This document shows, in pieces, positions 16,301 to 63,452 of a DNA stretch of 64,000 nucleotides. A program made the translations under genes and the position numbers. The DNA lies in the IMG/VR virus record IMGVR_UViG_3300023174_000039, positions 267,655-331,654 of that record, one strand, 5' to 3'. The notes under the pieces are model-generated. The model was not told the DNA's origin. It did no database searches and saw only the letters and a list, made by a program, of their open reading frames with translations. Position 1 is the stretch's first letter. Each line of letters starts with the position of its first letter.

Positions 16301-19300
16301 GTTGTCATTCTCAAGATTGGCACTGTTGATACTGTATGAATTTTGTAATTGGTTGGCCTTGTTTGAGATATTGGGCAATAATCCCAATGCAATCTGATTG
16401 TAATCGCTCTTGACCCACTTGTTGAAATCAAAGTCAGTACTGGGATCAACAATGACCTGCGCACTCCAATACTGGTCTTTGTACTTGACAATTTGTCCTT
16501 TGCTGTACTTCTTGAGACCAGACCATTCTTCAACATTGTCTTGGTTTAGAATGAAACCTTGTGCATCCACAGTGCCATTCCACTCAGTGGTTGTTACACC
16601 AACAAAATTCAATCGGCTTTGTCTAGCACCTGTAATTGGTTGATATATTAAATCTCCAAACACTGATTGATTGTTCAACACAATCATGTGTTCAAAATTT
16701 GTGAATCTTAAATCAGCAAAACTTAAACTTTGATCAGTCAATGGCTGTAATGTCAATGTGTTATCAAGACGAACAATATTGATATTACGAGCAGGCAGCT
16801 CACGTTTGTTTTGATCTAGTATGACATTCTCGCTGGTCTGTGTGACAATGCTGTCAACCACTGCGCCTGGTTTGGTAATTGTCAACGCACTGGCCAGTGG
16901 GTTGAGATTGATCAGGCAATTGTTTTCCCATCCTTGCTGACTCCAATACAAGAACTCAACAACCATCTGGTCCCAGTCTAACTGATAGCCGTTGACTCTG
17001 TCATCAAACGTGAGTCCTTGATCTGTTAGTAGTTTGCCATAGCTCAACAAGAAATCACAAACACTGGTTTGGTTAGTAAACACATACCCATAAGGAACTT
17101 GTGCCACTGTATTTGTATAAGTGGTAGGGACTCTCACAGTAACATCGCCAACTGTATATGGCTTTAATCTACCAGCTGACTGGCTTACTAAAATATTAAA
17201 GTACGGCTGAGTGGTTGAATATCCATATACAGCATAACCGCCTTCAACAATTTGTATCACAACTGAGCTATAAATTAGTCGATCAAATGGCTGATTTTTG
17301 TACAGCAACAAATCATAACTTTCGTCAGGAATCAACAATGTTGCATTCAAGCTGTTGGGGCTAGATTTTTCTGTGTATAATTTGATATACTGTTTGTCGG
17401 AATAACTAGCCAGTCTATAGCACAAGCGAACATCAATGCTGGCAAGATCTGCTTCAAGGGCAGAGGTGCTGTTTATACCAGTGATACGATTATAGTCCAC
17501 AATCCAGTTAATAAAACTAGCTTTGCTTGTGCCGTCACCGTACACTTGTATGCCATTGGCATCAAGTCGATACCGGTCATTGTAAAGAAATTGATCAAAC
17601 TCTGCCTGATAACGATATAAATCTCTATCAGCGTACAGTGCGTAAAACTTAGCTGGAATTGTCAATGCATACAATCTCATGACAGCAAATGGATAAGCAC
17701 TAGAGTTCCGCCATGATGATTCAACAGGACTACCGTCGCCGGCACTCCAACTCTTTTGAAATGTTGTTTCGTTGTAGTTGCCAACTACACATTCAAACGG
17801 GCTTACTAAATTGCCTTCAGTATCAACTGGTATCACTTGAGTGAGTCCTGGACGCACATAGGCTGGTAGTACATATGTTCCTGCTGGATCTGCTACAATA
17901 CCTGCTTCTAAATCATCCCATAGCACCATGTTTTCAGATGTGTAAGGTCCTACACCATATACAGTTTCCCACCAGGTTGGTTTGATACTGAATCCCAGCA
18001 TCTCCCAAGGAGTTTTGGCAGGATCTTGTGTGTCATAAAAGTATCTATAGATGCCACGCCAGGAGCCAATTAAGTTTTGACCAGTAGATAGTTTGTTTTG
18101 TGATCCACTATAGTTCCAGGAGAATTCGTTGTTTACAATATAATTTTGTGTGTTGTAATCAAGTTTGTTCCAGCCCACATAACTTAAAAAATCAACATTC
18201 AATATGGAATTAATTTCTTGTGATGAGTAACCGGTGTTGCGGAATTGTCCAGGAATAACATCACTGGCATTGATAGGCACTGGGTTGCCATCAAGTTTCA
18301 AGTTGTTGTAGATTCGAGTTTCAAACTCAAGTAACACTTGGTCTCGTACGTCACCAAATACTGGGGTTTGACTACCATCATGCCCAATGATAACTTCGCT
18401 GGAGCCGGATGTGGTGTCAATTGCAGTTATTACTGGACGGAATGTTGGGTACAGACCCATCTTGGTAGGAGTGTTTGGAACAAAACTTCCGTAAGTCGCT
18501 GAGTATTCTTGAACAGAGATAACATCGCCAATGGCCAATGGCACAAGTACTGTAATGCGTGGGCCATCTGTAGCAACAGTATAATCAATGCCACGAGTTA
18601 GTAATGCTTTGTTTTTGTAAACTAACAGTCCCAGATAGTTAGATGATGTATAATTGTAAACTTGTACTGTATCAAATACATTGGTTGTGATCAAACTTAC
18701 TGTGTAATTGTTTTCAATGTACACTGACCCTGATGGCAACATGTCTGACCAATAGAACGGATTAGATTCTAATCGTCCCAGAGTAATGTTGGCCATGGCC
18801 TCTACCAATATCTCTGCAGGAGTTTCTGTGTACAAAGTTAAATTGGTAACTTCGTTCATCAATAAGTCTTTGAACTTTTGGTATTCTCGCGAATTGTACT
18901 GCAAGGCAGCAAAAATATTATATTCTTTACTACGATTAAAATATCCAGCCAGTGTCAACGGACTACTTTGTTGTAGGATAATCAATCCATAAGGGCCAAT
19001 GTTTCCAAGGTCTCGAGTGTTGTTGGCACCATTGATTTTACCAGACAGTGTAATTAAGTTTTCACATATGGATTCGTAATGCGTACGAATGGTACCCAAA
19101 GTGAATACATCGCTGTTGCCATTGAGCGGGTTGTTCTCCAAATTGATAGGCACTTGATAAAATGCCACTTGACTTGTTTGGTCGCTTAACACCAATACTT
19201 CCACAATATCGCCAATGGCATAGGTATTATCCAACGTGATAGTAGATGAGTTAGACGTGGTTTCTAAAGTGTATGTTCCTGGATCTTTAAATTTACTACC

Positions 19301-35390: not shown

Positions 35391-36290
35391 ATGTCTTTAT
35401 TGCCCAAGCCGGCCGCCAAGGTCAACTATCTCAACAACAGAGATATTTTAAAAGAGATTCACCACAGCAAAAACACTTACTGCTGGTACAGAGACAGAGA
35501 TCTAGATCATCAGTTTGATTTAATCTTACCTAGCGTGGACAAAATAAATCAACGCACTGTGGTTGAAGCACGTAAAAACCGTGCGGACCGTATCAAACGA
35601 GAAACAGGCGAAATTATTGATCAAAAGAAGATACCCAATACAGATCTAGTGTTTCGTATCACGTGTTGGGATCATATTCCCAAGGCACCTAAGAAAATTA
35701 CCAAAGCTGAAGCAAAAAAGAAAAAGCTAGAAGAAATACTGGATCTAGATGATGCGGTTGAAGATGACCCGCTAGCAGACCTAGTAGATGTGCCGGTACT
35801 GAACATGAACTATGTGCGTTTGAACTTCCCACCGTTTGAACACTATCGACTAGATGAAAATAAAAATACTTTTTTGGTTGGGCGAAGTCACTGGCAGGGC
35901 GACTTGGAAACAGGAGAGTTTTCTAGAGATCATGGCAACATGACTCGTAAACTTGCAATGATGTTTATGAAGCTGTGTGAGCGTTATGCCACACGGTCAA
36001 ACTGGCGTGGCTACACCTACAACGAAGAGATGCGTGGACAGGCTCTACTACAACTCAGCCAAATTGGTCTGCAGTTTGACGAGTCAAAATCGCAGAACCC
36101 TTTTGCTTATTACACTGCGGCCATTACCAACAGCTTTACTCGTATCCTAAATATTGAGAAGAAGAATCAAAACATACGCGATGACATTTTGGAAATGAAC
36201 GGATTGAATCCATCATGGACTAGACAGAATTCCGGCAAGGCAGGTATGGCAGCCATGTCCGGACCGGTTGTGTCTAGCTTGGATGAGTAG
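35391..36290 (+). CDS. gp55: Late-transcription sigma factor gp55-like
   Basis: YLNNRDILKEIH, NWRGYTYNEEM, FDESKSQNPFAYYT. Confidence 0.85.
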   Translation: MSLLPKPAAKVNYLNNRDILKEIHHSKNTYCWYRDRDLDHQFDLILPSVDKINQRTVVEARKNRADRIKRETGEIIDQKKIPNTDLVFRITCWDHIPKAPKKITKAEAKKKKLEEILDLDDAVEDDPLADLVDVPVLNMNYVRLNFPPFEHYRLDENKNTFLVGRSHWQGDLETGEFSRDHGNMTRKLAMMFMKLCERYATRSNWRGYTYNEEMRGQALLQLSQIGLQFDESKSQNPFAYYTAAITNSFTRILNIEKKNQNIRDDILEMNGLNPSWTRQNSGKAGMAAMSGPVVSSLDE

Positions 36291-41154: not shown

Positions 41155-41583
41155 ATGACATGGCTATATCAAGATACCCCAATTGAGATGTTGCCCGATG
41201 AGTGTGTTGGATTTGTTTACTTGATTACAAATAATCTCACTGGACGCAAGTACATAGGCAAAAAATTAGCAAAATTTAGCAAAACAACATACAAGACAGT
41301 TAAGCAAAAGAATGGCATCAAGAAGAAGAAAAAGATACGATCAAAGGTCGACTCAGACTGGAGAGAGTACTATGGGTCAAGCCCAGAATTAACTTCAGAC
41401 GTAATCAAACTAGGCACCGAAAACTTTACCAGAGAAATACTTTTTTATTGCAACTCTAAATCGGAATGTAGTTACATTGAAGCAAGAGAACAATTTGCAA
41501 GAAGAGTATTAGAATCACAAGATTATTACAATGGCCACATACAAGTGCGTGTGCATGGCAGTCATATTATAGGCAAATTATGA
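41155..41583 (+). CDS. Compact GIY-YIG family nuclease
   Basis: GFVYLITNNLTGRKYIGKK, YYGSS, YIEAREQ, YYN; 142 aa with no appended DNA-binding domain. Confidence 0.85.
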   Translation: MTWLYQDTPIEMLPDECVGFVYLITNNLTGRKYIGKKLAKFSKTTYKTVKQKNGIKKKKKIRSKVDSDWREYYGSSPELTSDVIKLGTENFTREILFYCNSKSECSYIEAREQFARRVLESQDYYNGHIQVRVHGSHIIGKL

Positions 41584-54435: not shown

Positions 54436-54460
54436 AAAAAGCACCTTCGGGTGCTTTTTT
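54436..54460 (+). terminator. Rho-independent terminator with cUUCGg loop
   Basis: aaaaagcacc-ttcg-ggtgctttttt. Confidence 0.9.
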
Positions 54461-54461
54461 G

Positions 54462-54522
54462 TTGACAAAAATATCTAAAAATGTTATTGTTATTAGCAGA
54501 AATAGCACTCTCAAACTAAATA
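54462..54522 (+). promoter_or_regulatory. Sigma70-like promoter plus late promoter core for the homing endonuclease
   Basis: TTGACA 54462-67, 17 bp, TATTGT 54485-90; TAAATA 54517-22. Confidence 0.55.
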
Positions 54523-54527
54523 ACAAT

Positions 54528-55283
54528 ATGAAACCTTATACCTATCTAATTAAACATCGACCAACAGGCAAAATCTATTATGGCTATCGTTCTGCTAACA
54601 AAGTAGACCCACAAGAGGATTTATGGAAACATTACTTTACAAGTAGTCCGGGAGTACAAAAGCTGATTGAAGAAACCGGGACCGATAGCTTTGATGTAGA
54701 AATACGCAGGACATTTGAAACCAAAGAACAGGCAAGTAATTGGGAAACAAGAGTTCTCAAACGCTGTCGAGTATTAGAAGATGACCGCTGGATAAATCAA
54801 AATGTAGCTGGATACATTGTACCAACAGAAGAAAGCAGAAAGAAGATTAGCGAGTATCACAAAGATAAACCTAAGAGTGAAGAACATAAACTGAATTTAA
54901 GCAAATCTCAAAAAGGAAAACCCAAGATAAACAGCAAAAATCAGACGCCTGAATATAGAGCACTGATGTCTAAACTTAAATCTGGACCAAACAACCCAAT
55001 GTATGGCAAAGGGTGTACCGAAGAAAGAGCTAGAAAAATAAGTGAAGCCAATAAAGGACGCAACGCACCTAACAAAGGTGTGCCCATGAGCGAAGAACAA
55101 AAACAAAAACTCAGTCAAAGAATGAAAGGGCGTAAAGTTGATCCTGAAGTGCTAGCCCGCAGAGTAGCATCTCAAACTGGTCAAACCCGACCCAAGCTGT
55201 ACTGTGCTCACTGCAAGCGAAACATAGCTCAAGGTTGGTTCCACCGACACGGTGATAACTGTAGCAGTCAACCCACAGCCTGA
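54528..55283 (+). mobile_element. Free-standing GIY-YIG/NUMOD3 (Seg-like) homing endonuclease; likely start 54528
   Basis: PYTYLIKHRPTGKIYYGYR, WETRVL, WINQN; NUMOD3-like SEEHKLNLSKSQKGK and MSEEQKQKLSQRMKGRK; C-terminal CAHC...HGDNC. Confidence 0.85.
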
Positions 55284-55336
55284 CCACTTGACTCCGGCTT
55301 TTTCCAGGCCCTACGCCCAGTCACACAGTGGCCAGC

Positions 55337-55344
55337 GATAAATA
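55337..55344 (+). promoter_or_regulatory. Late promoter variant GATAAATA
   Basis: 29 nt upstream of ATG 55374. Confidence 0.55.
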
Positions 55345-55373: not shown

Positions 55374-57413
55374 ATGCCATTATCAATCGGACCTGGCTGG
55401 AGCATTGGCCCTGGATGGAGCATTGGGGGAGGCGGAGCCGCCCCTGCTGTCGCAACTGATCCGTACTTCATGTACAACTCGCTGTTGCTCACAGGAGATG
55501 GTACTAATCTCTCACAAAACAACACGTTCTTGGATTCAAGTACCAACAACTTTGCCATCACACGAGCAGGCAATACCACACAAGGCACGTTCTCTCCTTA
55601 TGGCACCAACTGGTCAAATTACTTTGATGGGTCTGGGGATTTTTTGACTGCGCCAAGCAATGCCGCATTTAATGTTAGCAACACATGGACAGTTGAGTGC
55701 TGGTATTACCCAGTAAGCAGATCAAATACATATCCATGTATTATCTCACTCTCAGATGGCAACTATGCAAATTCAATAGTTCTATTTGATAGACATGCTA
55801 GTTCTTCTACTAAGTTTTCTTTTGCCGTTGGATCCGCTGCTCTTAATTCAGGCACAACCAACGTTGTTGATGGCACATGGTATCATATAGCTTTAGTTAG
55901 CAATAGTGGTGTTGTTACTATGTATGTCAATGGCACTGCAGAGGTCACAGCAAATGTAACTGCTGGTGCTGTAAGTAAATCTGTTTATATTGGTGCAAAT
56001 TTTGATTATGCGTCTTATGCAACATACATCAATGGTTATATCAGCAATGCCAGAGTTGTTAAAGGTACCGCAGTTTATACAGGTAATTTTACCCCAAGTA
56101 CCACACCACTAACAGCAATCACCAACACAAGTTTATTAACCTGTGCTGCCAGTCGTTTTATTGATAACAGTACTAATAACTTTACTATTACCAAGAACGG
56201 TGATACCGCAGTTCAAAGATTTTCACCATTTGAGCCCACAGCCGCCTACTCAACCAGCACAATCGGTGGGTCAGGATACTTTGATGGCTCAGGTGATTAT
56301 TTGAGCGTTGCAAACAATGCAGCATTTGCCTTGGGATCTGGTGACTTCACTGTTGAATGTTGGTTTTATATGAACAACACATCAACTGCAATGTGTATGT
56401 TTGAGAATCGTCCAAGTAATACAGGTAGTGGAATTAATATGTTTGTCAATTATTCTGCGGCTGGACAAGTTCAATATAGAGACGTTACCGGCGCACCAAT
56501 TTCATCATCTATTACAGTATCAGCAAATACATGGAATCATTATGCATTAGTGCGTAGTGGTTCAACAATTACACTTTGGATTAACGGTCAAAGTGGCGGC
56601 ACTGTTACAAAAACAACAAACTTTACTGATACTACTTGTGTATTGGCGCAAGACCAGGGAGGCGGATTTAACTTTGCCGGTTATCTAAGTAATTTTAGGA
56701 TTGTTAAAGGCACTGCTGTTTATACAAGTGCATTTACACCAAGTACTACACCACTAACAGCCATTGCAAATACAAGTTTATTAACTGGCTTTACCAACGC
56801 AGGTGTCATTGACAATGCCATGATGAACGACTTGGAAACAGTTGGTGATGCAAAAATATCTACCACACAATCAAAGTTTGGCGGTTCAAGTATGGCGTTT
56901 GATGGTACTGGTGATTACTTAACACAACCAAGCTCACAAAACTTCAATTTTGGATCAGGCGATTTCACAATGGAGGGATGGTTTTACCAAACAGGTTTGT
57001 CATCGTCCTACCCTGGTATAGTTTCAAATCCATTAGCTTGGGGCAATGCAGGTGCGTGGGCAGTTTTATCTAGCCATGCCGCATCCGGAGTAAGAAAATT
57101 ACAATTTTATTGCTACAACGCTGACCAATCTAATCCTTTACTGTTAGGAACAACATCATTATCTGATAATACTTGGTATTATTTTGCACTAACTAGATCA
57201 GGCACAACCTTTAGATTGTTTTTGAATGGGACACAAGAGGCGACAGCTACATTTAGCGGATCCGTTACTAGTGTAAGCAGTGGTCTTGTTGTAGGTATTA
57301 ATCAAACGGCTTATGCGTTTCAAGGTTACATAGACGACCTCCGCATCACCAAGGGATACGCCAGATACACCACCACATTCACGCCACCCACAGCGGCACT
57401 ACCAACTTATTAA
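55374..57413 (+). CDS. LamG/concanavalin A-like lectin-fold virion protein A1 (three modules)
   Basis: Repeated FTVECW.Y, W.H.A.VR, FxGYI..LRI.KG motifs. Confidence 0.8.
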   Translation: MPLSIGPGWSIGPGWSIGGGGAAPAVATDPYFMYNSLLLTGDGTNLSQNNTFLDSSTNNFAITRAGNTTQGTFSPYGTNWSNYFDGSGDFLTAPSNAAFNVSNTWTVECWYYPVSRSNTYPCIISLSDGNYANSIVLFDRHASSSTKFSFAVGSAALNSGTTNVVDGTWYHIALVSNSGVVTMYVNGTAEVTANVTAGAVSKSVYIGANFDYASYATYINGYISNARVVKGTAVYTGNFTPSTTPLTAITNTSLLTCAASRFIDNSTNNFTITKNGDTAVQRFSPFEPTAAYSTSTIGGSGYFDGSGDYLSVANNAAFALGSGDFTVECWFYMNNTSTAMCMFENRPSNTGSGINMFVNYSAAGQVQYRDVTGAPISSSITVSANTWNHYALVRSGSTITLWINGQSGGTVTKTTNFTDTTCVLAQDQGGGFNFAGYLSNFRIVKGTAVYTSAFTPSTTPLTAIANTSLLTGFTNAGVIDNAMMNDLETVGDAKISTTQSKFGGSSMAFDGTGDYLTQPSSQNFNFGSGDFTMEGWFYQTGLSSSYPGIVSNPLAWGNAGAWAVLSSHAASGVRKLQFYCYNADQSNPLLLGTTSLSDNTWYYFALTRSGTTFRLFLNGTQEATATFSGSVTSVSSGLVVGINQTAYAFQGYIDDLRITKGYARYTTTFTPPTAALPTY

Positions 57414-57422
57414 GGAACACAC

Positions 57423-58346
57423 ATGGGATTCACAATCGGCCCTGGATGGGCAATTACAGGGGCATGGGCCATTGGCGACACTGGGGGCGGAGCCTCAGTC
57501 ACACCCACAGTGGAATACTTGGTGGTTGCCGGCGGAGGTGGCGGAGGTGGTAAAAATACCGGTGGTGGTGGAGGTGCAGGTGGTTTTAGAACAGCCACCG
57601 GATTTGCAGTCACATCCGGTACACCTATCACAGTCACAGTTGGCGCAGGTGGCGTTTCAGCTGCAACCACCACTCAAGCATATGGTGGCAACGGTGGCGA
57701 TTCAGTGTTTGGCACTATTACCGCCACTGGTGGTGGCGGAGGTGGCTACGGTGTAGGCGCAGGTCAACGTGCAGTTGCTGGTAAAGCCGGTGGTTCAGGC
57801 GGCGGTGGTGGTGGCGATGACACAGGCGGACCATATTCAGGAGGTGCAGGTAACACACCATCTACTTCGCCAGTGCAAGGTTATGCTGGCGGCCAAGGAA
57901 ATTCACCCGGAGCCAATGGCGGTGGTGGCGGTGGATCATCAGCCGCGGGCGAAAACGGCATTGTGAATACTCGTGGTGGAAATGGCGGAGCAGGAACAGC
58001 AAGTTCAATATCTGGAACAAGTGTGACTTACGCCGGTGGCGGTGGTGGTGGTGGTAATGCAACTGCTGGCGCAGGCGGTTCTGGTGGTGGTGGCGCAGGA
58101 GGCGCAGGCAATCCAGGAGGCGCAGGAACTGCAGGAACCCCTAATACTGGAGGCGGTGGAGGTGGTTGCGGTGGTTACGAAACCAGTAACGCATCTGGTG
58201 CAGGTGGATCGGGTATCGTGATCATTCGTTATCCAGATAGTTATGCAGCCGCTACTGCCACAACAGGGTCACCCACTATCACAGTAGCCGGAGGCTACAG
58301 AGTGTACAAATGGACCACTGTGGGTTCAGGATCAATAACATTTTAA
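57423..58346 (+). CDS. Glycine-rich virion protein B1
   Basis: VEYLVVAGGGGGG, NTGGGGGG, GGSGIVIIRYP, GGYRVYKWT. Confidence 0.75.
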   Translation: MGFTIGPGWAITGAWAIGDTGGGASVTPTVEYLVVAGGGGGGGKNTGGGGGAGGFRTATGFAVTSGTPITVTVGAGGVSAATTTQAYGGNGGDSVFGTITATGGGGGGYGVGAGQRAVAGKAGGSGGGGGGDDTGGPYSGGAGNTPSTSPVQGYAGGQGNSPGANGGGGGGSSAAGENGIVNTRGGNGGAGTASSISGTSVTYAGGGGGGGNATAGAGGSGGGGAGGAGNPGGAGTAGTPNTGGGGGGCGGYETSNASGAGGSGIVIIRYPDSYAAATATTGSPTITVAGGYRVYKWTTVGSGSITF

Positions 58347-58360
58347 TCGAGGAAACACAT

Positions 58361-60373
58361 ATGCCATTATCAATTGGACCCGGCTGGAGCATTGGCCCTG
58401 GATGGAGCATTGGAGGAGGCGGAGCCGCCCCTGCTGTCGCAACTGACCCCTACTTCATGTACAACTCATTGCTGTTGACCGGAGACGGAACTAACAATGC
58501 CACAAACAACACATTTGTAGATGGTTCAACCAACAACTTTAGTATCACTCGCAACGGTAATACCACACAGGGCACCTTTTCACCATATGGTGCTAATTGG
58601 AGTAACTACTTTGATGGTAGTACCTCTTATCTAACAACAGCATCTAGTTCAGCCCCGTCTAGTGATTTTACACTGGAGGCATGGATTTATAGGACGGCTG
58701 CAACAACTGCTGTTATAATTGGTTATGGATCGGAAACAACCGGTCGTACATTTATGTATGTTACATCGGGCGGCAGTTTAGCTACAAGCATTTATAATAT
58801 AGGAGACACTACATTTGGTGGATCAATTCCTCTAAATCAATGGACTCATATTGCCATGGTTCGCTCAAGTAATGTAATTACGGGCTATATAAACGGCACT
58901 GCTCAAGCAACAACGACATCAACTGCTACAACTGTAGGGAATACAGGTGGGTTTGGGGTGGGAGCCGGAAAAGACGGTTCAAACAAATTTACAGGATATA
59001 TTTCTAATGCTAGGGTAGTCAATGGAGTTGCAGTTTACACATCAGCCTTTACGCCAAGTACAACGCCACTAACAGCCATAGCAGGTACAAGTTTGTTGAC
59101 CTGCCAAAGCAACAGATTCAAAGATAACTCATCAAATGCATTTGCATTAACTGTGTCAGGCACCCCAACCGTGCAAGTGTTCTCACCATTCAGTCCCACC
59201 GCAGCCTACTCAGCAAGTACAATCGGTGGGTCAGGATACTTCGATGGCGCAGGAGATTTTTTAACAGCTCCAGCAAACACTGCATTCAATTTGGGCACTG
59301 GCGACTTTACCATTGAATGTTGGGTTTACTTGACAAATTCGACGGCCACTACTCAAAGCATTATGGGTATTGGTGACACTGGAGCAACCAATGATATTCA
59401 ACTTTGGTATAATAATGTTGCCAACAAAATCACATTTAATGTGTATGGCAACCCCAGATTTGATTCTAGTTCCAATGTCACTACCGGCAATTGGATACAC
59501 CTAGCGTGTACCCGCGCATCGGGTGCATTCAAGCTGTTTATTAATGGTGTACAAGAGGCCGCTGGCTCTCTAGGCAACAATTTATCAAACAACGTGCTGG
59601 TCATTGGCAGACCTTACGCATCACTTCCAAATAATGAATATTTTTATGGTTACATCAGTAATCTTCGCATTGTTAAAGGCACCGCGGTCTACACCTCGGC
59701 CTTTACACCACCTACCTCACCGGTCACTTCAATCAGTGGTACCAGCATATTAACCAACTTTACCAACGGTGGTATTATTGACAATGCAATGATCAACAAC
59801 TTGGAAACAGTGGGTGATGCCAAAATATCCACTGCACAATCAAAGTTTGGCGGTTCAAGTATGGCGTTTGATGGTACTGGCGATTATCTAGCCGTATCTC
59901 CTAATGTAACTAATAACTTAGGCACCGGTGATTTCACAATTGAAGCATGGATATATCTAACATCGGCCTCTACATATCAATTTTTAATAGGTAGTAGCAA
60001 CAATGTTAGTGGCTACATGATGGTTGGACTAAACGTACCGCTTTCCCCAACATCAACTATTGCTTTAGGTACGTCTGGCCAGACTTGGCCACTACAATTT
60101 GGAACAGGCACAACATTTACATCAAATACGTGGACTCATATTGCTATCACTAGATCAGGCACAACAAATAGAGCATTCATCAATGGAGTCCAACTTGGTT
60201 CTAATGTAACCGATTCTACTAATTGGACATTCCCAAGTAATACAATGTGGATAGGTAACCAATCAGGCGGAAATTCCTTGAACGGTTACATAGACGACCT
60301 CCGAGTAACCAAAGGCTATGCACGTTATACAAGTAACTTCACGCCTCCCACTGCGGCACTACCAACTTATTAA
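58361..60373 (+). CDS. LamG-like protein A2 (start at 58361, not 58310)
   Basis: Same MPLSIGPGWS start as A1; GAGG RBS. Confidence 0.8.
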   Translation: MPLSIGPGWSIGPGWSIGGGGAAPAVATDPYFMYNSLLLTGDGTNNATNNTFVDGSTNNFSITRNGNTTQGTFSPYGANWSNYFDGSTSYLTTASSSAPSSDFTLEAWIYRTAATTAVIIGYGSETTGRTFMYVTSGGSLATSIYNIGDTTFGGSIPLNQWTHIAMVRSSNVITGYINGTAQATTTSTATTVGNTGGFGVGAGKDGSNKFTGYISNARVVNGVAVYTSAFTPSTTPLTAIAGTSLLTCQSNRFKDNSSNAFALTVSGTPTVQVFSPFSPTAAYSASTIGGSGYFDGAGDFLTAPANTAFNLGTGDFTIECWVYLTNSTATTQSIMGIGDTGATNDIQLWYNNVANKITFNVYGNPRFDSSSNVTTGNWIHLACTRASGAFKLFINGVQEAAGSLGNNLSNNVLVIGRPYASLPNNEYFYGYISNLRIVKGTAVYTSAFTPPTSPVTSISGTSILTNFTNGGIIDNAMINNLETVGDAKISTAQSKFGGSSMAFDGTGDYLAVSPNVTNNLGTGDFTIEAWIYLTSASTYQFLIGSSNNVSGYMMVGLNVPLSPTSTIALGTSGQTWPLQFGTGTTFTSNTWTHIAITRSGTTNRAFINGVQLGSNVTDSTNWTFPSNTMWIGNQSGGNSLNGYIDDLRVTKGYARYTSNFTPPTAALPTY

Positions 60374-60381
60374 GGACATAT

Positions 60382-61326
60382 ATGGGATTCACAATCGGGC
60401 CCGGATGGGCAATTACAGGTGCATGGGCCATAGGAGACACAGCAGGAGGCGGTGGTGGATCAACTGTTCCTGCTGAATTTTTAGTTGTTGCCGGGGGCGG
60501 TGGCGGTGCTTATGCCAGTGGTGGGGGTGGTGGCGGCGGAATAGTACATGCTGTCACAGCAAATTTCACAATGTCAACGGCGTATACTATCGCTGTTGGT
60601 GACGGCGGTGCCGGAACTAACTCGGCAAGTTTTGCAAGTTCAGGACAAAACAGTTCCATAGTAGGAACCAGTATCAACGCTGTTGCACTTGGAGGCGGAG
60701 GAGGTGCTGCCTATAATAATACAGGTGTAGCCGGCGGATCAGGTGGCGGCGGTGGATACAACTTTGGAGTTGTTGCACAAATTGGCGGAGCATCAACACA
60801 AACTTCTGGAAGTTATAACGGATATGGATCAGCTGGTGGAAGTTCAATTGATAGCCAATCACAGCCATTTTCAGCAGGTGGTGGCGGAGGTGCAGGCGGC
60901 CCAGGTGGGTCAGTTACTTCTGCCACCGGTATTGCAGGTGTAGGCGGGGTCGGACGTGCATTTAGCACATCTGGTACTTCAACATATTATGGTGGCGGTG
61001 GTGCAGGTGGTGCCGGGGGCAGCCTATATACAACACCTATAACAACAGCCGCATTAGGTGGTGGTGGAGTTTGTGGTGGCAACGGTGGTGGTACCGCTAT
61101 GAATGGTACACCAAATACAGGTGGTGGTGGTGCAGCCGACAACAGATCAACGGGCAATAATTACAATGGTACCTTTGGCAACGGTGGATCGGGTATCGTG
61201 ATCATTCGTTATCCAGACTCATATGCAGCCGCAACTGCCACTACTGGCAGCCCAACAATCACCGTCGCAGGTGGCTACAGAGTCTACAAATGGACCACTG
61301 TGGGCAGTGGCTCAATAACATTTTAA
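60382..61326 (+). CDS. Glycine-rich virion protein B2
   Basis: N-terminal 19 aa and C-terminal ~40 aa identical to B1. Confidence 0.75.
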   Translation: MGFTIGPGWAITGAWAIGDTAGGGGGSTVPAEFLVVAGGGGGAYASGGGGGGGIVHAVTANFTMSTAYTIAVGDGGAGTNSASFASSGQNSSIVGTSINAVALGGGGGAAYNNTGVAGGSGGGGGYNFGVVAQIGGASTQTSGSYNGYGSAGGSSIDSQSQPFSAGGGGGAGGPGGSVTSATGIAGVGGVGRAFSTSGTSTYYGGGGAGGAGGSLYTTPITTAALGGGGVCGGNGGGTAMNGTPNTGGGGAADNRSTGNNYNGTFGNGGSGIVIIRYPDSYAAATATTGSPTITVAGGYRVYKWTTVGSGSITF

Positions 61327-61342
61327 TCGAGGAAACATAAAC

Positions 61343-63433
61343 ATGCCATTATCAATTGGACCCGGCTGGAGCATCGGCCCTGGATGGAGCATTGGAGGAG
61401 GCGGAGCCGCCCCTGCGGTCACAACTGACCCGTACTTCATGTACAACTCACTGTTGCTCACAGGTGATGGTACAAATCTCTCACAGAACAATACCTTCCT
61501 AGACTCAAGTACAAATAATTTTACTATTACCCGCAATGGCAATACCACACAGGGTACATTCAGTCCTTATGGAAGCAATTGGTCTTTGAGTAATCCAAAC
61601 ACTTCGGATAATGGCATTGGAGTTGCATCGAATGCCGCATTAAATCTTGGAACTGCTAGTTTTACAGTTGAATGCTGGGTGAACCTGAATGCGTTACCAT
61701 CATCGAATGTCTGGACCACATCTGCTGGCGGCTACCAAGCGTTATTTGGTACTGGTCCTAGCAATAGCGCCACAGGATCACAACTGTATATTGGAACCAC
61801 AAACTTATTTTTTGACACAACGTCTGACGGAAGTGGACCAATCAGTGTTGCACACGGAATGACTGCTGGAGTTTGGTATCACATTGCTCTTACTCGTAGC
61901 GGCAATACTTTTGCCTTGTACAAAAATGGTGTGCTACTTCAATCAGCTTCTGATGCAAGCTCAATGACTTCTGGATATGGATGGGGCATTGCTAGACCAG
62001 AACCAGTTGGATCATACTCCGGCGGCTGGTTAAATGGATACATATCTAACTTTAGACTGGTAACTGGATCAGTTGTGTATGTCGGAACATTCACACCGCC
62101 CACAACACCACTTACTGCAATCTCTGGAACTCAATTGTTATTATGCCAGAGCAACAGATGGATTGACAACAGTTCAAATAGTTTTGCTGTCAGCGTTGGT
62201 AGCACTGCACCAACTGTACAACGATTCTCACCATTTGAACCCACAGTCGCCTACTCATCAAGTGTGATTGGTGGGTCAGGCTACTTTGATGGCACGGGGG
62301 ATTATTTGACTATCGCCAGATCAAATCTACTTATACCAGTTGCCAATGAAAATTTTACAATAGAATCGTGGGTTTATTTAACACAAGCCGCAGACCAACA
62401 GATTGTTGGATTTCATACACAGGGCGTAAGTTCAGACTGGCTTATATCTATAAGTAGTACAAATTATACTACATTTTATATTAGTGCTACTGCCACAAGT
62501 GTGACATCTAGTATTGCTGTACGATTAAACACTTGGAATCATATTGCGGTTGTGCGTACAAATACAAACACCATTACTTTATATGTAAATGGAGTTGCCG
62601 GGGCAACTACTACAACTACTTCAACGATGGTAGGAAATGGATCTAACCCATTGACAATTGGATCAGACTATAATGGTGTTAATTGGAGGTATACAGGTTA
62701 CATTTCTGATATTCGTATTGTCAAAGGTACAGGAGTCTATACCTCAAACTTTACTCCACCAACTGCACCATTAACAGCAGTTGCTAATACCCAACTCTTA
62801 TTAAGTTACACCAACGGTGGCATCATTGACAGCACAATGATCAACAACTTGGAAACAGTTGGTGATGCAAAAATATCTACCACACAAAGCAAGTTTGGCG
62901 GATCCAGCATGTACTTTGATGGCAATTTAGATTATTTAAACGGCGGAGTAAATTCTGGTTACAGTTTTGGATCAGGAGATTTCACTATAGAGTCTTGGGT
63001 ATATATTGTTGCTAGAGGAAGCAGCGGGTCATGTTTTGCTGGAACTTGGGCAGCTAGTGGTAGAGGATGGATCTGGCTTTCTAACCCCACTCAGTATGGG
63101 TTAGTGTATAGCACCAATGGTACTAATGAAACTGCTATATATTCAACCTACACAATACCTTTAAACACATGGACACATTTGGCTACCGTTAGAAATGGAA
63201 ATACTATTACAAACTATGCAAATGGTGTTAGTATTGGTACTGGCTCTGTTACTGGGGTTACGATTAGTACGCCTACTCAACCACTTTATGTAGGAGCCAA
63301 TAAGCAAGACGTTGATAGTAGTATAAACAATTATCAAATGAACGGTTATATGAACGATTTTAGAATAACAAAAGGTTATGCACGTTACACAGCCAACTTC
63401 ACACCCCCAACTGCAGCATTGCCTACACAATAA
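61343..63433 (+). CDS. LamG-like protein A3
   Basis: Same architecture as A1 and A2. Confidence 0.8.
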   Translation: MPLSIGPGWSIGPGWSIGGGGAAPAVTTDPYFMYNSLLLTGDGTNLSQNNTFLDSSTNNFTITRNGNTTQGTFSPYGSNWSLSNPNTSDNGIGVASNAALNLGTASFTVECWVNLNALPSSNVWTTSAGGYQALFGTGPSNSATGSQLYIGTTNLFFDTTSDGSGPISVAHGMTAGVWYHIALTRSGNTFALYKNGVLLQSASDASSMTSGYGWGIARPEPVGSYSGGWLNGYISNFRLVTGSVVYVGTFTPPTTPLTAISGTQLLLCQSNRWIDNSSNSFAVSVGSTAPTVQRFSPFEPTVAYSSSVIGGSGYFDGTGDYLTIARSNLLIPVANENFTIESWVYLTQAADQQIVGFHTQGVSSDWLISISSTNYTTFYISATATSVTSSIAVRLNTWNHIAVVRTNTNTITLYVNGVAGATTTTTSTMVGNGSNPLTIGSDYNGVNWRYTGYISDIRIVKGTGVYTSNFTPPTAPLTAVANTQLLLSYTNGGIIDSTMINNLETVGDAKISTTQSKFGGSSMYFDGNLDYLNGGVNSGYSFGSGDFTIESWVYIVARGSSGSCFAGTWAASGRGWIWLSNPTQYGLVYSTNGTNETAIYSTYTIPLNTWTHLATVRNGNTITNYANGVSIGTGSVTGVTISTPTQPLYVGANKQDVDSSINNYQMNGYMNDFRITKGYARYTANFTPPTAALPTQ

Positions 63434-63452
63434 ATTTAAATAATCAAGACAT

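What the first reader, a model, noticed from the sequence alone, without database searches (positions are those of the whole stretch)
55374..63433. Constant/variable mosaic array of LamG-like and Gly-rich proteins suited to recombinational shuffling
Seen: A-B-A-B-A with ~2.98-kb period. Each A has three lectin-fold modules whose interiors are highly divergent but are separated by conserved DNA blocks: the first ~200 bp; the TIGGSGYFDG linker; the NxLETVGDAKISTxQSKFGGSSMxFDG linker (~56810, 59780, 62830); and YIDDLR.TKGYARYT..FTPPTAALPT at the end. B1 and B2 share their ends (35 identical bp ggtggatcgggtatcgtgatcattcgttatccaga at 58203 and 61184) with divergent cores. Inference: a cassette system in which conserved blocks serve as crossover points to swap binding modules, giving adhesin or receptor diversity without a DGR. 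It lies behind the capsid gene, suggesting head decoration or glycan adhesion.
Basis: partly seen in the sequence, partly recalled or inferred. Interest (0 to 1): 0.68.

Follow-up and report, generated by a model that had tools for sequence, protein, structure and literature searches.

The report
Mosaic lectin and adhesin gene array
A freshwater jumbo phage carries five tandem genes for probable host-binding proteins, and their binding modules have been swapped with other phages by recombination inside short conserved linker sequences; the principle is known from T-even tail-fibre adhesins but appears here in different protein families.

Summary
Five co-oriented genes form an A-B-A-B-A array with a 2987/2982-bp period. 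A is a short N-terminal tag plus three Laminin_G_3 modules. B is the same kind of tag plus a Gly_rich_2 domain.

The shuffling inference is largely right.
- Trees of the three module interiors are mutually incongruent (AU p <= 1e-3), and the paralogs never form a clade.
- A1 is a chimera. It resembles protein P0126 over 56253-56805 and protein P0130 from 56807 onward.
- Modules also appear to move between positions.

This looks like ordinary homologous recombination with a large pool of phage genes, plus patchy gene conversion. It is not a programmed cassette system. The record has no reverse transcriptase, invertase or integrase, and every copy is a complete gene with its own ribosome-binding site.

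Head decoration is the less likely role. The B model matches the receptor-binding tip of the Pam3 tail fibre and a Bxb1 tail-tip protein (Z about 14). B-type domains elsewhere are fused to T4 gp9/10 and Mtd anchor domains, and homologues sit among tail-fibre genes. Attachment through the shared N-terminal tag is inferred, not shown.

Verdict: a new variant of a known kind.

The parts
55374..57413 (+). A1: N-terminal tag, then three Laminin_G_3 modules (679 aa)
   Evidence: ORF. PF13385 x3, E 3e-51. AF2 model shows three LamG sandwiches with neurexin/laminin LG as top Foldseek matches.
57423..58346 (+). B1: N-terminal tag, then a TNF-like plus glycine-rich adhesin-type domain (307 aa)
   Evidence: PF21722, E 1e-17. 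AF2 pLDDT 88. VIA-align Z 14.4 to Bxb1 tail tip 9d93_Qa and Z 13.9 to Pam3 fibre 7ypx_A.
58361..60373 (+). A2: second tag plus triple-LamG gene (670 aa from the homologous ATG; the ORF list extends it to 58310)
   Evidence: The upstream extension overlaps the end of B1 and is not homologous to A1 or A3.
60382..61326 (+). B2: second tag plus Gly_rich_2 gene (314 aa)
   Evidence: PF21722, E 7e-13. Its ends are identical to B1 as protein; the core is divergent.
61343..63433 (+). A3: third tag plus triple-LamG gene (696 aa)
   Evidence: PF13385 x3, E 9e-51. Its module-1 interior groups with P0228 at bootstrap 100.
55374..55514 (+). N-terminal tag block of A (first 47 codons); copies at 58361-58501 and 61343-61483. 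The B genes carry a related tag at 57423-57482 and 60382-60441.
   Evidence: 96-100% amino-acid identity among A copies, with same-codon fraction 0.68-0.79 against 0.34 expected and 0.42 in the next conserved block. The tag recurs on unrelated C-terminal domains in other phages. pLDDT is low in monomer models.
56211..56304 (+). Linker-1 block (TIGGSGYFDG); copies at 59171-59264 and 62216-62309. It contains the left breakpoint of the P0126-like tract (about 56252/56253).
   Evidence: Repeat family D7; breakpoint mapping.
56679..56917 (+). Linker-2 block (LETVGDAKIST...FDG); copies at 59648-59886 and 62696-62934. It contains the switch from P0126-like to P0130-like sequence (56804-56807) and exact repeats of 46 and 41 bp.
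   Evidence: Repeat family D3; exact repeats; max chi-square 322.9, permutation p <= 5e-4. Logan unitigs break here.
56253..56805 (+). Module-2 tract of A1 shared with protein P0126 (locus L031)
   Evidence: 83% nt identity over 861 nt. 90-100% amino-acid identity, with same-codon fraction 0.68-0.84 in five of the six 30-codon windows from A1 residue 300 to 480. Informative sites 228 versus 22.
56807..57350 (+). Module-3 tract of A1 shared with protein P0130 (locus L028) and with P0142, P0146, P0149 and P0228
   Evidence: 85% nt identity over 686 nt. Same-codon fraction 0.74-0.89, falling to 0.26 in the last 19 codons although the protein is identical there. Bootstrap 100.
57313..57490 (+). 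Junction block: 3' end of A, spacer, 5' end of B. A copy lies at 60273-60449; only the A 3' end is present at 63333-63436.
   Evidence: Repeat families D6 and D12; junction sequences.
58203..58357 (+). Junction block: 3' end of B (47 identical residues) plus spacer. A copy lies at 61183-61337. Includes the 35-bp exact repeat.
   Evidence: Repeat family D8.
54459..55283 (+). GIY-YIG/NUMOD3 homing endonuclease between the capsid gene and the array (context; a possible promoter of local exchange)
   Evidence: PF19835 and PF07460, phrog_314. A gene at the same position in relatives L010 and L011 shares about 33-34% identity with the C-terminal part of this HEG.

Best explanation
The array encodes five late-expressed accessory host-binding proteins of an uncultured freshwater jumbo myophage. 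The phage has a T4-type head and baseplate core, and its capsid protein is about 65% identical to those of PA5oct, Vibrio phage 2.275.O and Phosso.

The A proteins are a roughly 20-residue N-terminal tag followed by three LamG lectin-fold modules. The B proteins are a related tag followed by a TNF-like plus glycine-rich domain. That is the fold used as the receptor-binding tip of the Pam3 tail fibre.

Inferred: the shared tag is a docking peptide that mounts all of these proteins, and at least three further tagged proteins elsewhere in the genome, on one virion site. That site is most likely a tail-fibre or baseplate scaffold. This would give the phage several binding specificities at once.

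Shown: the constant/variable mosaic has two causes.
- The constant blocks are the family-wide framework: the first and last strands of each LamG sandwich and the inter-module linkers.
- These blocks are also where homologous recombination has replaced whole module interiors with modules from a very large pool of related genes in other phages, including between module positions.

Patchy gene conversion among the paralogs keeps some blocks unusually alike at synonymous sites. No dedicated diversification enzyme is involved; the phage's own general recombination machinery would suffice.
For: Anatomy.

Recombination:
- Interiors of A1, A2 and A3 are no closer to each other (25-33% identity) than to an unrelated 61-kb phage.
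- The three module trees reject each other (AU p from 1e-3 to 1e-51), and the paralogs are never monophyletic.
- A1 switches from P0126-like to P0130-like at 56804-56807 and becomes P0126-like at about 56253. Both points lie inside conserved blocks.
- Exchanged tracts have same-codon fractions of 0.74-0.89. The capsid gene scores 0.59-0.64 against its closest relatives. Interiors between paralogs score 0.39-0.42, against 0.36 expected at saturation.
- The A1 module-1 interior is 71% identical to a second-position module of P0207. The last module of the fourth copy is 82% identical to a segment at residues 104-232 of the 917-aa P0240, inferred to be its first module.

Gene conversion: the tag block scores 0.68-0.79 and linker 2 scores 0.67-0.76, against 0.42 in the neighbouring conserved block. 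Fisher p is 1e-4 to 8e-8. The C-terminal block is pair-specific: A1-A2 0.62, A1-A3 0.17.

Function:
- B1 model pLDDT 88. Z 14.4 (171 residues aligned, rmsd 3.0) to the Bxb1 tail tip and Z 13.9 to Pam3 fibre gp24. [quoted passage not shown]
- Gly_rich_2 is fused to T4_gp9_10_N and to Mtd_N in other phages and to LamG modules in every order.
- B-next-to-A recurs in L008, L030 and L027, beside fibre-like genes.
- Tagged genes lie between giant fibre genes, and near the tail sheath gene in L016.
- The LamG protein of phage ACPWH lies between a 4-kb 'TolA protein' gene (read here as a tape measure, not tested) and the lysis genes.

Docking-peptide precedent: a 29-residue N-terminal conserved peptide is required to mount the second RBP in phage KP32 (PMC13352976).

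Recombination machinery: SbcCD-like gp46/47 genes are in the window.
Against: - No virion proteomics, structure or host is available. Tail versus head location rests on fold similarity, domain fusions and gene neighbourhoods in other phages.
- In this lineage the locus directly follows the capsid gene, also in relatives L010, L011 and L018. That is where decoration genes often sit.
- The partner of the tag is unknown. No T4 gp9/10-type domain was found in the record, though that search also rang nowhere in the controls.
- The tag and linkers are low-confidence in monomer models. The trimer prediction for B gave no verdict.
- Raised synonymous identity in linker 2 is also seen between unrelated phages (0.60). 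It therefore cannot be credited to intragenomic conversion alone, and selection on the nucleotide sequence is not excluded.
- Connectivity across the 31-46-bp exact repeats is not independently verified. Public unitigs break at every conserved block.
Confidence: 0.65

Rival explanations
1. Head decoration: A and B are capsid-displayed lectins or adhesins (Hoc-like in role), bound to the shell through the N-terminal tag. They would mediate weak adherence to glycans or particles rather than primary receptor recognition.
For: - The array directly follows the portal-protease-scaffold-capsid block.
- Tagged LamG genes occupy the same post-capsid position in three related phages.
- Beads-on-a-string lectin or Ig-type domains are typical of decoration proteins (general knowledge).
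- One neighbour of tagged genes in L012 hits a 'head decoration' PHROG at its N-terminus.
Against: - The B fold matches tail-fibre tip and tail-tip proteins at Z about 14.
- Gly_rich_2 is fused to gp9/10 and Mtd tail anchors.
- Elsewhere, A- and B-type genes sit among fibre, sheath and lysis genes.
- In relative L010 the post-capsid region continues with several large fibre-like proteins; PHROG support for 'tail fiber' there is a single weak hit.
- No Hoc or Soc homology appears in Pfam or PHROGs.
Confidence: 0.17
2. Plain tandem duplication and divergence: an A-B unit was duplicated in place. The interiors diverged under diversifying selection while the framework was held by purifying selection, with no recombination involved.
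For: - The period is regular and the gene junctions and spacers are homologous.
- The constant blocks are conserved as protein across the whole family, as a structural framework would be.
Against: - Synonymous sites of the interiors are saturated between paralogs.
- The paralogs never form a clade in any module.
- A1 modules 2 and 3 have relatives of 87-95% amino-acid identity in different proteins whose other modules are unrelated.
- Breakpoints are statistically sharp.
- The closest related phages (capsid 89-96% identical) lack the triple-module genes at this locus.

Duplication may explain the skeleton of the array but not its content.
Confidence: 0.08
3. Programmed intragenomic switching: the copies act as donor and acceptor cassettes that are rearranged at high frequency within a population, by inversion, gene conversion or retro-mutagenesis, to vary the displayed adhesin.
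For: - Direct exact repeats of 31-46 bp flank every variable segment.
- Synonymous identity is raised in the tag and linker blocks.
- A homing endonuclease sits next to the array.
Against: - The 331-kb record has no reverse transcriptase, serine invertase or tyrosine recombinase.
- There are no meaningful inverted repeats.
- All copies are complete genes with ribosome-binding sites.
- Two independent studies hold the same sequences at about 100% identity, and the only joints seen are short-sided ones in glycine-rich repeats. Contigs cannot reveal rare variants.
Confidence: 0.05
4. Assembly artefact: the order or combination of modules in the record is a mis-threading of a repeat-rich assembly graph built from several co-occurring strains.
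For: - The record starts exactly inside a linker-2 block.
- Public 31-mer unitigs break at every conserved block, so they do not confirm connectivity.
Against: - Exact repeats are at most 46 bp, shorter than normal reads.
- Every reading frame is intact with regular spacers.
- The same unique segments occur in a second, independent study.
- Module incongruence is seen across many contigs from different samples and sources.
Confidence: 0.05

Closest known systems
T-even distal tail-fibre adhesins (gp38 of T2/T6/S16 type, and gp37): glycine-rich motifs alternating with hypervariable segments
   Same: A conserved framework alternates with hyperplastic segments. [quoted passage not shown] 2011, PMC3157838, citing Tetart 1996 and 1998). 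The B proteins show the same alternation of glycine-rich motifs and variable loops (consensus).
   Different: There is no sequence homology to gp38 or gp37 and no gp37-binding N-terminal domain. The exchanged unit in A is a whole 130-150-residue LamG interior rather than a short loop. Modules also appear to move between positions. The genes form an alternating tandem array instead of a single locus.
Pam3 tail fibre gp24 (7ypx) and the polyglycine-rich tail-tip protein of mycobacteriophage Bxb1 (9d93 chain Q)
   Same: The predicted B1 fold covers residues 25-276 with Z 13.9-14.4, rmsd 2.7-3.0 A and 31-35% identity over 171-177 residues. In gp24 the TNF-like plus glycine-rich domain is the proposed receptor-binding tip, with a conserved stem and a variable distal end.
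   Different: B lacks the long N-terminal helical docking domain of gp24 and has only a short tag of about 20 residues. It has an extra C-terminal beta segment (residues 277-307). Its oligomeric state is unknown (one search gave no verdict).
Branched multi-RBP systems with a conserved N-terminal docking peptide (Klebsiella phages KP32/K11/KP34); hyperbranched fibres of RaK2/phiK64-1/phiKp24 jumbo phages
   Same: Several receptor-binding proteins are encoded side by side. They share a short conserved N-terminal peptide in front of unrelated C-terminal domains. In KP32 that 29-residue peptide is required for virion incorporation (PMC13352976). Multi-RBP fibre complexes are reported for the RaK2/phiK64-1 and phiKp24 jumbo phages (abstracts PMC9700779 and PMC10253068). 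Their kinship to this phage was not tested here.
   Different: The tag has no sequence similarity to those peptides. The distal domains are lectin-fold and glycine-rich modules, not depolymerase tailspikes. No branching-domain partner was identified. Binding was not tested.
Poly-LamG 'virion structural' or 'baseplate wedge' proteins of T4-like cyanophages, and the ConA-like protein of phage DSL-LC04
   Same: Same Laminin_G_3 repeat family (PHROG hits E 1e-44 to 1e-104; 393 phage records). The DSL-LC04 protein is two complete A-type units fused, with the same constant blocks.
   Different: Those proteins are single long polypeptides, often fused to baseplate domains. Here the unit is a stand-alone gene with a short tag, triplicated and interleaved with Gly_rich_2 genes.
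Diversity-generating retroelements and invertible tail-fibre segments (Mu Gin, P1 Cin, shufflons)
   Same: The outcome is the same: variation of the distal, ligand-binding part of a phage adhesin.
   Different: The defining enzymes are absent: no reverse transcriptase, serine invertase or tyrosine recombinase. There are no inverted repeats. Variation is between lineages, not shown within a clone.

Membership tests
Laminin_G_3 (PF13385) repeat proteins | Pfam domain match above the gathering score | tested here: met
   173.8, 216.2 and 172.4 bits against a cut-off of 27.6, three stretches each in A1, A2 and A3. Ten hits above the cut-off in the genome, all in A-type genes.
Laminin_G_3 (PF13385) repeat proteins | LamG/ConA-like beta-sandwich fold | tested here: met
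   The AF2 model has three beta-sandwich domains with pLDDT about 75-92. Foldseek top matches are neurexin LNS and laminin LG arrays, E 1e-13 to 1e-17.
Gly_rich_2 (PF21722) / TNF-like plus glycine-rich adhesin domain (Pam3 gp24 type) | Pfam domain match above the gathering score | tested here: met
   B1 65.4 bits and B2 49.5 bits against a cut-off of 24.3. The third copy scores 61.3 bits.
Gly_rich_2 (PF21722) / TNF-like plus glycine-rich adhesin domain (Pam3 gp24 type) | Fold: beta-sandwich whose strands extend into a lattice of glycine-rich extended segments | tested here: met
   Z 13.9 to 7ypx_A (174 aligned, rmsd 2.7) and Z 14.4 to 9d93_Qa. ALK/LTK glycine-rich domains score Z 4.7-5.6.
Gly_rich_2 (PF21722) / TNF-like plus glycine-rich adhesin domain (Pam3 gp24 type) | Trimeric fibre with an N-terminal helical domain docking to the baseplate | tested here: not met
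   No helix is predicted in B1. The N-terminus is a 24-residue low-confidence tag. Trimer prediction gave no verdict. B therefore shares the distal domain but not the gp24 architecture.
T-even gp38-type adhesin | Sequence homology and an N-terminal gp37-attachment domain | tested here: not met
   No gp38 family appears in the Pfam or PHROG hits for B. There is no sequence match to any PDB chain.
T-even gp38-type adhesin | Glycine-rich motifs separating hypervariable segments; recombination at conserved motifs | tested here: met
   The consensus of 31 homologues alternates G-runs with variable stretches of 6-10 residues. B1/B2/B3 share ends and some inner segments, with divergent stretches between. 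Recombination at conserved motifs was shown for the A genes and was not formally tested for B.
Branched RBP system with conserved docking peptide (KP32 type) | Short conserved N-terminal peptide shared by neighbouring RBP genes with unrelated distal domains | tested here: met
   The tag is shared by A1-A3, B1-B3 and a 102-aa ORF. In other phages, tag variants are shared by neighbouring genes with LamG, beta-propeller, Gly-rich or small domains.
Branched RBP system with conserved docking peptide (KP32 type) | Partner with a T4 gp10-like branching domain | tested here: inconclusive
   PF07880 was not found in the record, but the search rang in no control genome either. An 1155-aa baseplate wedge protein is present in the window.
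Branched RBP system with conserved docking peptide (KP32 type) | Peptide required for incorporation into the virion | not testable with these tools
   This needs genetics or biochemistry on a cultured phage.
Diversity-generating retroelement | Reverse transcriptase plus template/variable repeat pair | tested here: not met
   No PF00078 match in the 331-kb record; the controls rang.
Invertible or shufflon-type tail-fibre switch | Site-specific recombinase and inverted crossover sites | tested here: not met
   No PF00239 or PF00589 match. Only two weak inverted pairs of 18-25 nt.
Hoc/Soc-type head decoration | Homology to known decoration proteins, or shown capsid binding | tested here: inconclusive
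   A and B have no decoration family among their Pfam or PHROG hits. The position after the capsid gene is compatible. Capsid binding is not testable here.

The most novel reading that the evidence does not exclude
The short N-terminal tag and the inter-module blocks together form a plug-and-play platform. One docking peptide would let a jumbo phage mount seven or more different lectin and adhesin proteins on a single site. The linker blocks would be kept alike at the DNA level, including synonymous sites and across unrelated phages. That would let any LamG module from a community-wide pool be dropped into any position. The constant blocks would then be maintained partly for evolvability and not only for structure.
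Probability: 0.2. Interest if true: 0.7.

Novelty: new variant of a known kind. Interest (0 to 1): 0.5.

Why it matters
Host range in phages is set by receptor-binding proteins, and how these diversify is mostly known from a few cultured models.

This is a clean natural example in two very abundant but uncharacterised metagenomic families. Searches with A1 and with B1 each returned thousands of matches: 7998 and 6328 of the 8000 candidates scored. Whole lectin modules are exchanged at mapped breakpoints inside conserved linkers, apparently even between positions.

The data also point to a short N-terminal tag that may be a general docking peptide in uncultured freshwater phages. If confirmed, the tag and linker blocks would be practical handles. 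They could help predict which metagenomic genes are RBPs, help understand multi-specific jumbo phages, and support modular RBP engineering in laboratory phage-host systems.

Tried and rejected
- Megablast of the whole array against cultured phages found nothing. tblastn with B1 also found nothing, probably because of the low-complexity filter.
- Sequence search of A1 and B1 against PDB chains gave no hits.
- Homotrimer prediction for B1 gave no verdict. It is not evidence either way.
- Public contigs laid on 55374-61373 show the array in two independent studies. The listed joints all have sides under 30 nt and lie in glycine-rich repeats or conserved blocks, so I discount them. Contigs cannot show rare variants, so population invariance is neither shown nor refuted. 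Depth differences between A and B unitigs are not interpretable.
- The T4 late-promoter consensus TATAAATA does not occur in the array. Only a one-mismatch GATAAATA lies upstream of A1.
- A search for a gp9/10-type partner was uninformative.
- Literature searches for PF21722 and for the tag motif returned nothing relevant.
- A weak Pfam hit of A3 to the clostridial neurotoxin receptor-binding N-domain scores 21.0 bits, below the 23.8 cut-off. I read it as shared jelly-roll fold. Nothing suggests a toxin.
- I first read the raised synonymous identity of linker 2 as purely intragenomic gene conversion. I withdrew that reading because unrelated phages show it too.

Full report
**What the window is.** The window is the last 64 kb of a 331,654-bp IMG/VR virus record that CheckV rates 95% complete. 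It carries T4-type structural genes:
- baseplate wedge and hub proteins, and a 4936-aa virion protein;
- a gp55-like late sigma factor and gp46/47-like SbcCD;
- portal, prohead protease, scaffold and a Gp23-family major capsid protein.

The capsid protein is about 65% identical to those of the jumbo phages PA5oct, Vibrio 2.275.O and Sinorhizobium Phosso. Public runs that hold the sequence are lake and freshwater metagenomes.

**The observation.** Five co-oriented genes follow the capsid gene and a GIY-YIG/NUMOD3 homing endonuclease:

| Gene | Coordinates |
|---|---|
| A1 | 55374-57413 |
| B1 | 57423-58346 |
| A2 | 58361-60373 |
| B2 | 60382-61326 |
| A3 | 61343-63433 |

- Unit spacing is 2987 and 2982 bp.
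- Spacers are 8-16 nt, each with a Shine-Dalgarno-like GGA or GAGGAAAC, so all five genes look translatable.
- Each A has three Laminin_G_3 domains and each B has one Gly_rich_2 domain.
The 35-bp exact repeat is at 58203 and 61183. Exact repeats of 46 and 41 bp exist in linker 2 and in the tag block.
- Between the blocks, amino-acid identity among the A paralogs drops to 10-35%.

A fourth, partial A copy sits at the start of the record, which begins exactly inside a linker-2 block. A third B copy and a 102-aa tagged ORF sit near 101-104 kb of the record.

**Are the constant blocks only a structural framework?** Partly. An alignment with an A-type gene from another viral contig (L008) and with the ConA-like protein of phage DSL-LC04 shows the same blocks. 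The DSL-LC04 protein proves to be two complete A units fused head to tail. The blocks are conserved as protein across unrelated phages at 58-78% identity, while every interior sits at 20-36%. In the AF2 model the blocks correspond to the last strands of one LamG sandwich, the linker, and the first strands of the next. Purifying selection on a framework therefore explains much of the protein-level pattern.

**Is there recombination as well?** Yes. Five lines of evidence support it.
1. *Synonymous sites.* Identical residues in the interiors use the same codon no more often than codon usage predicts (0.39-0.42 observed, 0.36 expected), so the paralogs are old. The first 47 codons score 0.68-0.79 and linker 2 scores 0.67-0.76 (Fisher p 1e-4 to 8e-8). 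The C-terminal block is alike only between A1 and A2: 0.62, against 0.17 for A1-A3.
2. *Distances.* The interiors of A1, A2 and A3 are no closer to each other than to those of unrelated phages.
3. *Close relatives of single modules.* The protein search found many homologues. A1 module 3 is 85-97% identical to P0130 and 80-92% identical to P0142, P0146, P0149 and P0228. A1 module 2 is 85-100% identical to P0126. The other modules of those proteins are at background level.
4. *Trees.* Maximum-likelihood trees of the three interiors (13 sequences) place A3 with P0228 in module 1. They place A1 with P0126 in module 2, and A1 with the P0130 group in module 3, each at bootstrap 100. A1, A2 and A3 never form a clade. 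Each data set rejects the other two trees (AU p from 1e-3 to 1e-51).
5. *Breakpoints at the DNA level.* In the triplet A1/P0126/P0130:
   - A1 shows no preference through module 1.
   - It becomes P0126-like at about 56253 (228 versus 22 informative sites).
   - It switches to P0130-like between 56804 and 56807 (202 versus 19).
   - Max chi-square is 322.9, against a largest permuted value of 18.2.

These points lie in the TIGGSGYFDG block and the LETVGDAKIST block. The right-hand end of the P0130-like tract lies in the C-terminal block. There the protein stays identical but codon identity falls to 0.26.

Inside the tracts, codon identity is 0.74-0.89. That is higher than for the capsid gene against its nearest relatives (0.59-0.64). 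The exchanges therefore appear younger than the split of this phage from those relatives.

Modules also appear to change position. The A1 module-1 interior is 71% identical to a second-position module of P0207. The last module of the fourth copy is 82% identical to residues 104-232 of the 917-aa P0240, which I take to be its first module. This fits the similarity between the blocks that flank different positions (repeat families D4, D10 and D11).

**One caveat on gene conversion.** Raised codon identity in linker 2 also holds between unrelated phages (0.60-0.61). It may reflect frequent exchange through this block across the whole gene pool, or selection on the nucleotide sequence, and not only conversion within this genome. 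The tag block and the pair-specific C-terminal block remain the best signs of intragenomic conversion.

**Is it a programmed system?** Nothing indicates one.
- The record has no reverse transcriptase, serine invertase or tyrosine recombinase, and no meaningful inverted repeats.
- There are no truncated or silent copies.
- Contigs from two independent studies carry the unique segments at about 100% identity. Their unitigs break at every conserved block, as expected for shared 31-mers. The only joints have short sides in repetitive sequence.
- Contigs cannot show rare variants, so this test is open.
- The adjacent homing endonuclease and the phage's gp46/47-type nuclease could promote ordinary homologous exchange during co-infection. 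That is an inference from T4 biology, recalled from memory.

**What the proteins are.**

*The B fold.* B1 folds with high confidence (pLDDT 88, pTM 0.85), apart from its first 24 residues. Residues 25-276 match a chain of the mycobacteriophage Bxb1 tail tip (Z 14.4, 171 residues, rmsd 3.0 A, 35% identity). They also match the Pam3 tail fibre gp24 (Z 13.9). ALK/LTK glycine-rich domains follow at Z about 5. In Pam3 this TNF-like plus glycine-rich domain is the distal, proposed receptor-binding part. It has a conserved glycine-rich stem and variable tips, and it has been likened to the S16 gp38 adhesin (PMC9608196). In Bxb1, polyglycine-rich domains are associated with the central fibre (PMC13252515). 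This explains why B1, B2 and B3 share their ends (the sandwich strands) and differ in the core (the loops between glycine runs).

*Fusions and neighbours.* Elsewhere Gly_rich_2 is fused to the T4 gp9/10 N-terminal domain, to the Mtd N-terminal domain, and to fn3, TIG and He_PIG domains. It is also fused to LamG modules in every order, including a LamG inserted inside the glycine-rich domain. B-next-to-A recurs in three unrelated contigs beside fibre-like genes. A1 models as three LamG sandwiches on flexible linkers.

**The tag.** A and B begin with related motifs of about 20 residues. The A form is M-P-L-S-I-G-P-G-W-S-I-G-P-G-W-S-I. The B form is M-G-F-T-I-G-P-G-W-A-I-T-G-A-W-A-I.
- A pattern scan of viral contigs found the A motif at the start of proteins of 100-260 aa with single LamG or other small domains, often in adjacent pairs.
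- In three relatives of this phage (capsid 89-96% identical), tagged genes lie directly after the capsid gene, following a homing endonuclease in two of them. Where complete, they are single-LamG genes. So the locus is conserved in place and hypervariable in content.
- In other lineages, tagged genes lie between giant fibre genes, and in L016 near the tail sheath gene.
- Other phages have their own tag variant, shared by neighbouring genes with different domains. One contig pairs beta-propeller proteins with a triple-LamG protein.
- A-type units also occur behind other N-terminal regions: a YPGG...WTL motif, or a 320-aa TIG/He_PIG region.

This is the usual layout of receptor-binding proteins: a phage-specific anchor and an exchangeable distal part. 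A close functional precedent is the 29-residue conserved peptide that docks the second RBP of Klebsiella phage KP32 onto the branching domain of the first (PMC13352976). I therefore read the tag as a docking peptide. This is inference; no partner was identified.

**Tail or head?**

*For the tail.* The evidence is the B fold, the anchor-domain fusions and the neighbourhoods above. In addition, LamG proteins in phages DSL-LC04 and ACPWH lie beside other tail genes and the lysis genes.

*For the head.* The evidence is the conserved position right after the capsid gene in this lineage. However, in relative L010 that same region continues with several large fibre-like proteins, with only weak PHROG support for 'tail fiber'. 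In Vibrio phage 2.275.O, tail-collar and short-tail-fibre genes follow within a few kb.

I put tail or fibre association at roughly three to one over head decoration.

**Comparison with what is known.** The mechanism is the one described for T-even adhesins: conserved motifs double as crossover sites, and specificity segments are drawn from a shared pool (PMC3157838). Several things differ here:
- the protein families (poly-LamG and a stand-alone TNF-like/glycine-rich domain);
- the size of the exchanged unit (a whole domain interior);
- apparent exchange between positions;
- the alternating tandem array;
- the short tag shared by heterologous proteins.

I found no description of this tag or of PF21722 in the searchable literature.

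**Limits.** The phage is uncultured and its host is unknown. The placement, the partner of the tag, the ligands and the expression timing are all inferred. Module order across the exact repeats of up to 46 bp is not independently confirmed. The external homologues come from metagenome assemblies that could contain errors of their own. The consistency across many samples and sources argues against that as a general explanation.

Noticed in passing
Own genome record, C1:1-613 (outside the window): The record begins inside the linker-2 block of a fourth A-type gene, of which only the last LamG module is present. That module's interior is 82% identical to a segment at residues 104-232 of the 917-aa P0240. 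The assembly probably broke at the repeat, so more A/B units may lie in the missing part (about 5%).
   Followed up: partly
Own genome record, C1:about 101,370-105,560, minus strand (locus L025): A third B copy (302 aa, ends identical to B1 and B2) and a 102-aa ORF with the same tag lie about 220 kb from the array. They are interleaved with cellular-type genes: an Asp/Glu racemase, a PF10118 metal-dependent hydrolase and a sodium:dicarboxylate symporter fragment. These could be auxiliary metabolic genes or a chimeric join; this is unresolved.
   Followed up: partly
window 54459-55283 (+) and 41155-41583 (+): A SegE-like GIY-YIG/NUMOD3 homing endonuclease sits between the capsid gene and the array, and a second GIY-YIG-like ORF lies upstream. 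Relatives L010 and L011 carry a gene in the same slot that shares about 33-34% identity with the C-terminal part of this HEG. This suggests repeated invasion of the site.
   Followed up: partly
L010:10001-11495, L011:1710-2480, L018:8560-8757: Phages with capsid proteins 89-96% identical to this one carry tagged genes directly after the capsid gene (237-256-aa single-LamG genes in L010 and L011; cut short by the contig end in L018). The post-capsid locus is fixed in place but turns over quickly in content.
   Followed up: yes
window 58310-58360: The ORF list extends A2 upstream to an ATG at 58310 that overlaps the end of B1. The same out-of-frame peptide (MDHCG.RIN) appears after the third B copy. 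It is therefore a by-product of the conserved 3' end of B, not a real N-terminus.
   Followed up: yes
window 7340-22150 (-): A 4936-aa ORF matches a 'virion structural protein' PHROG (E 2e-292). It has no Laminin_G_3 domain.
   Followed up: no
window 55336-55343: GATAAATA, one mismatch from the T4 late-promoter consensus, lies about 30 nt upstream of the A1 start. The exact consensus is absent from the array. The window encodes a gp55-like late sigma factor (35391-36290).
   Followed up: partly
L028:603-5441, L027:674-13284: Other phage contigs have their own N-terminal tag variants, shared by adjacent genes with different distal domains. L028 has two beta-propeller proteins and a triple-LamG protein. 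L027 has six adjacent genes built from Gly_rich_2 and LamG modules in different orders.
   Followed up: partly
window 55374-61373, runs X1 and X2: Unitigs covering the B genes have about half the word depth of unitigs covering the A genes, in both runs. The tool warns that such depths cannot be compared, so nothing is concluded. GC-rich glycine codons or strain heterogeneity could both produce this.
   Followed up: no
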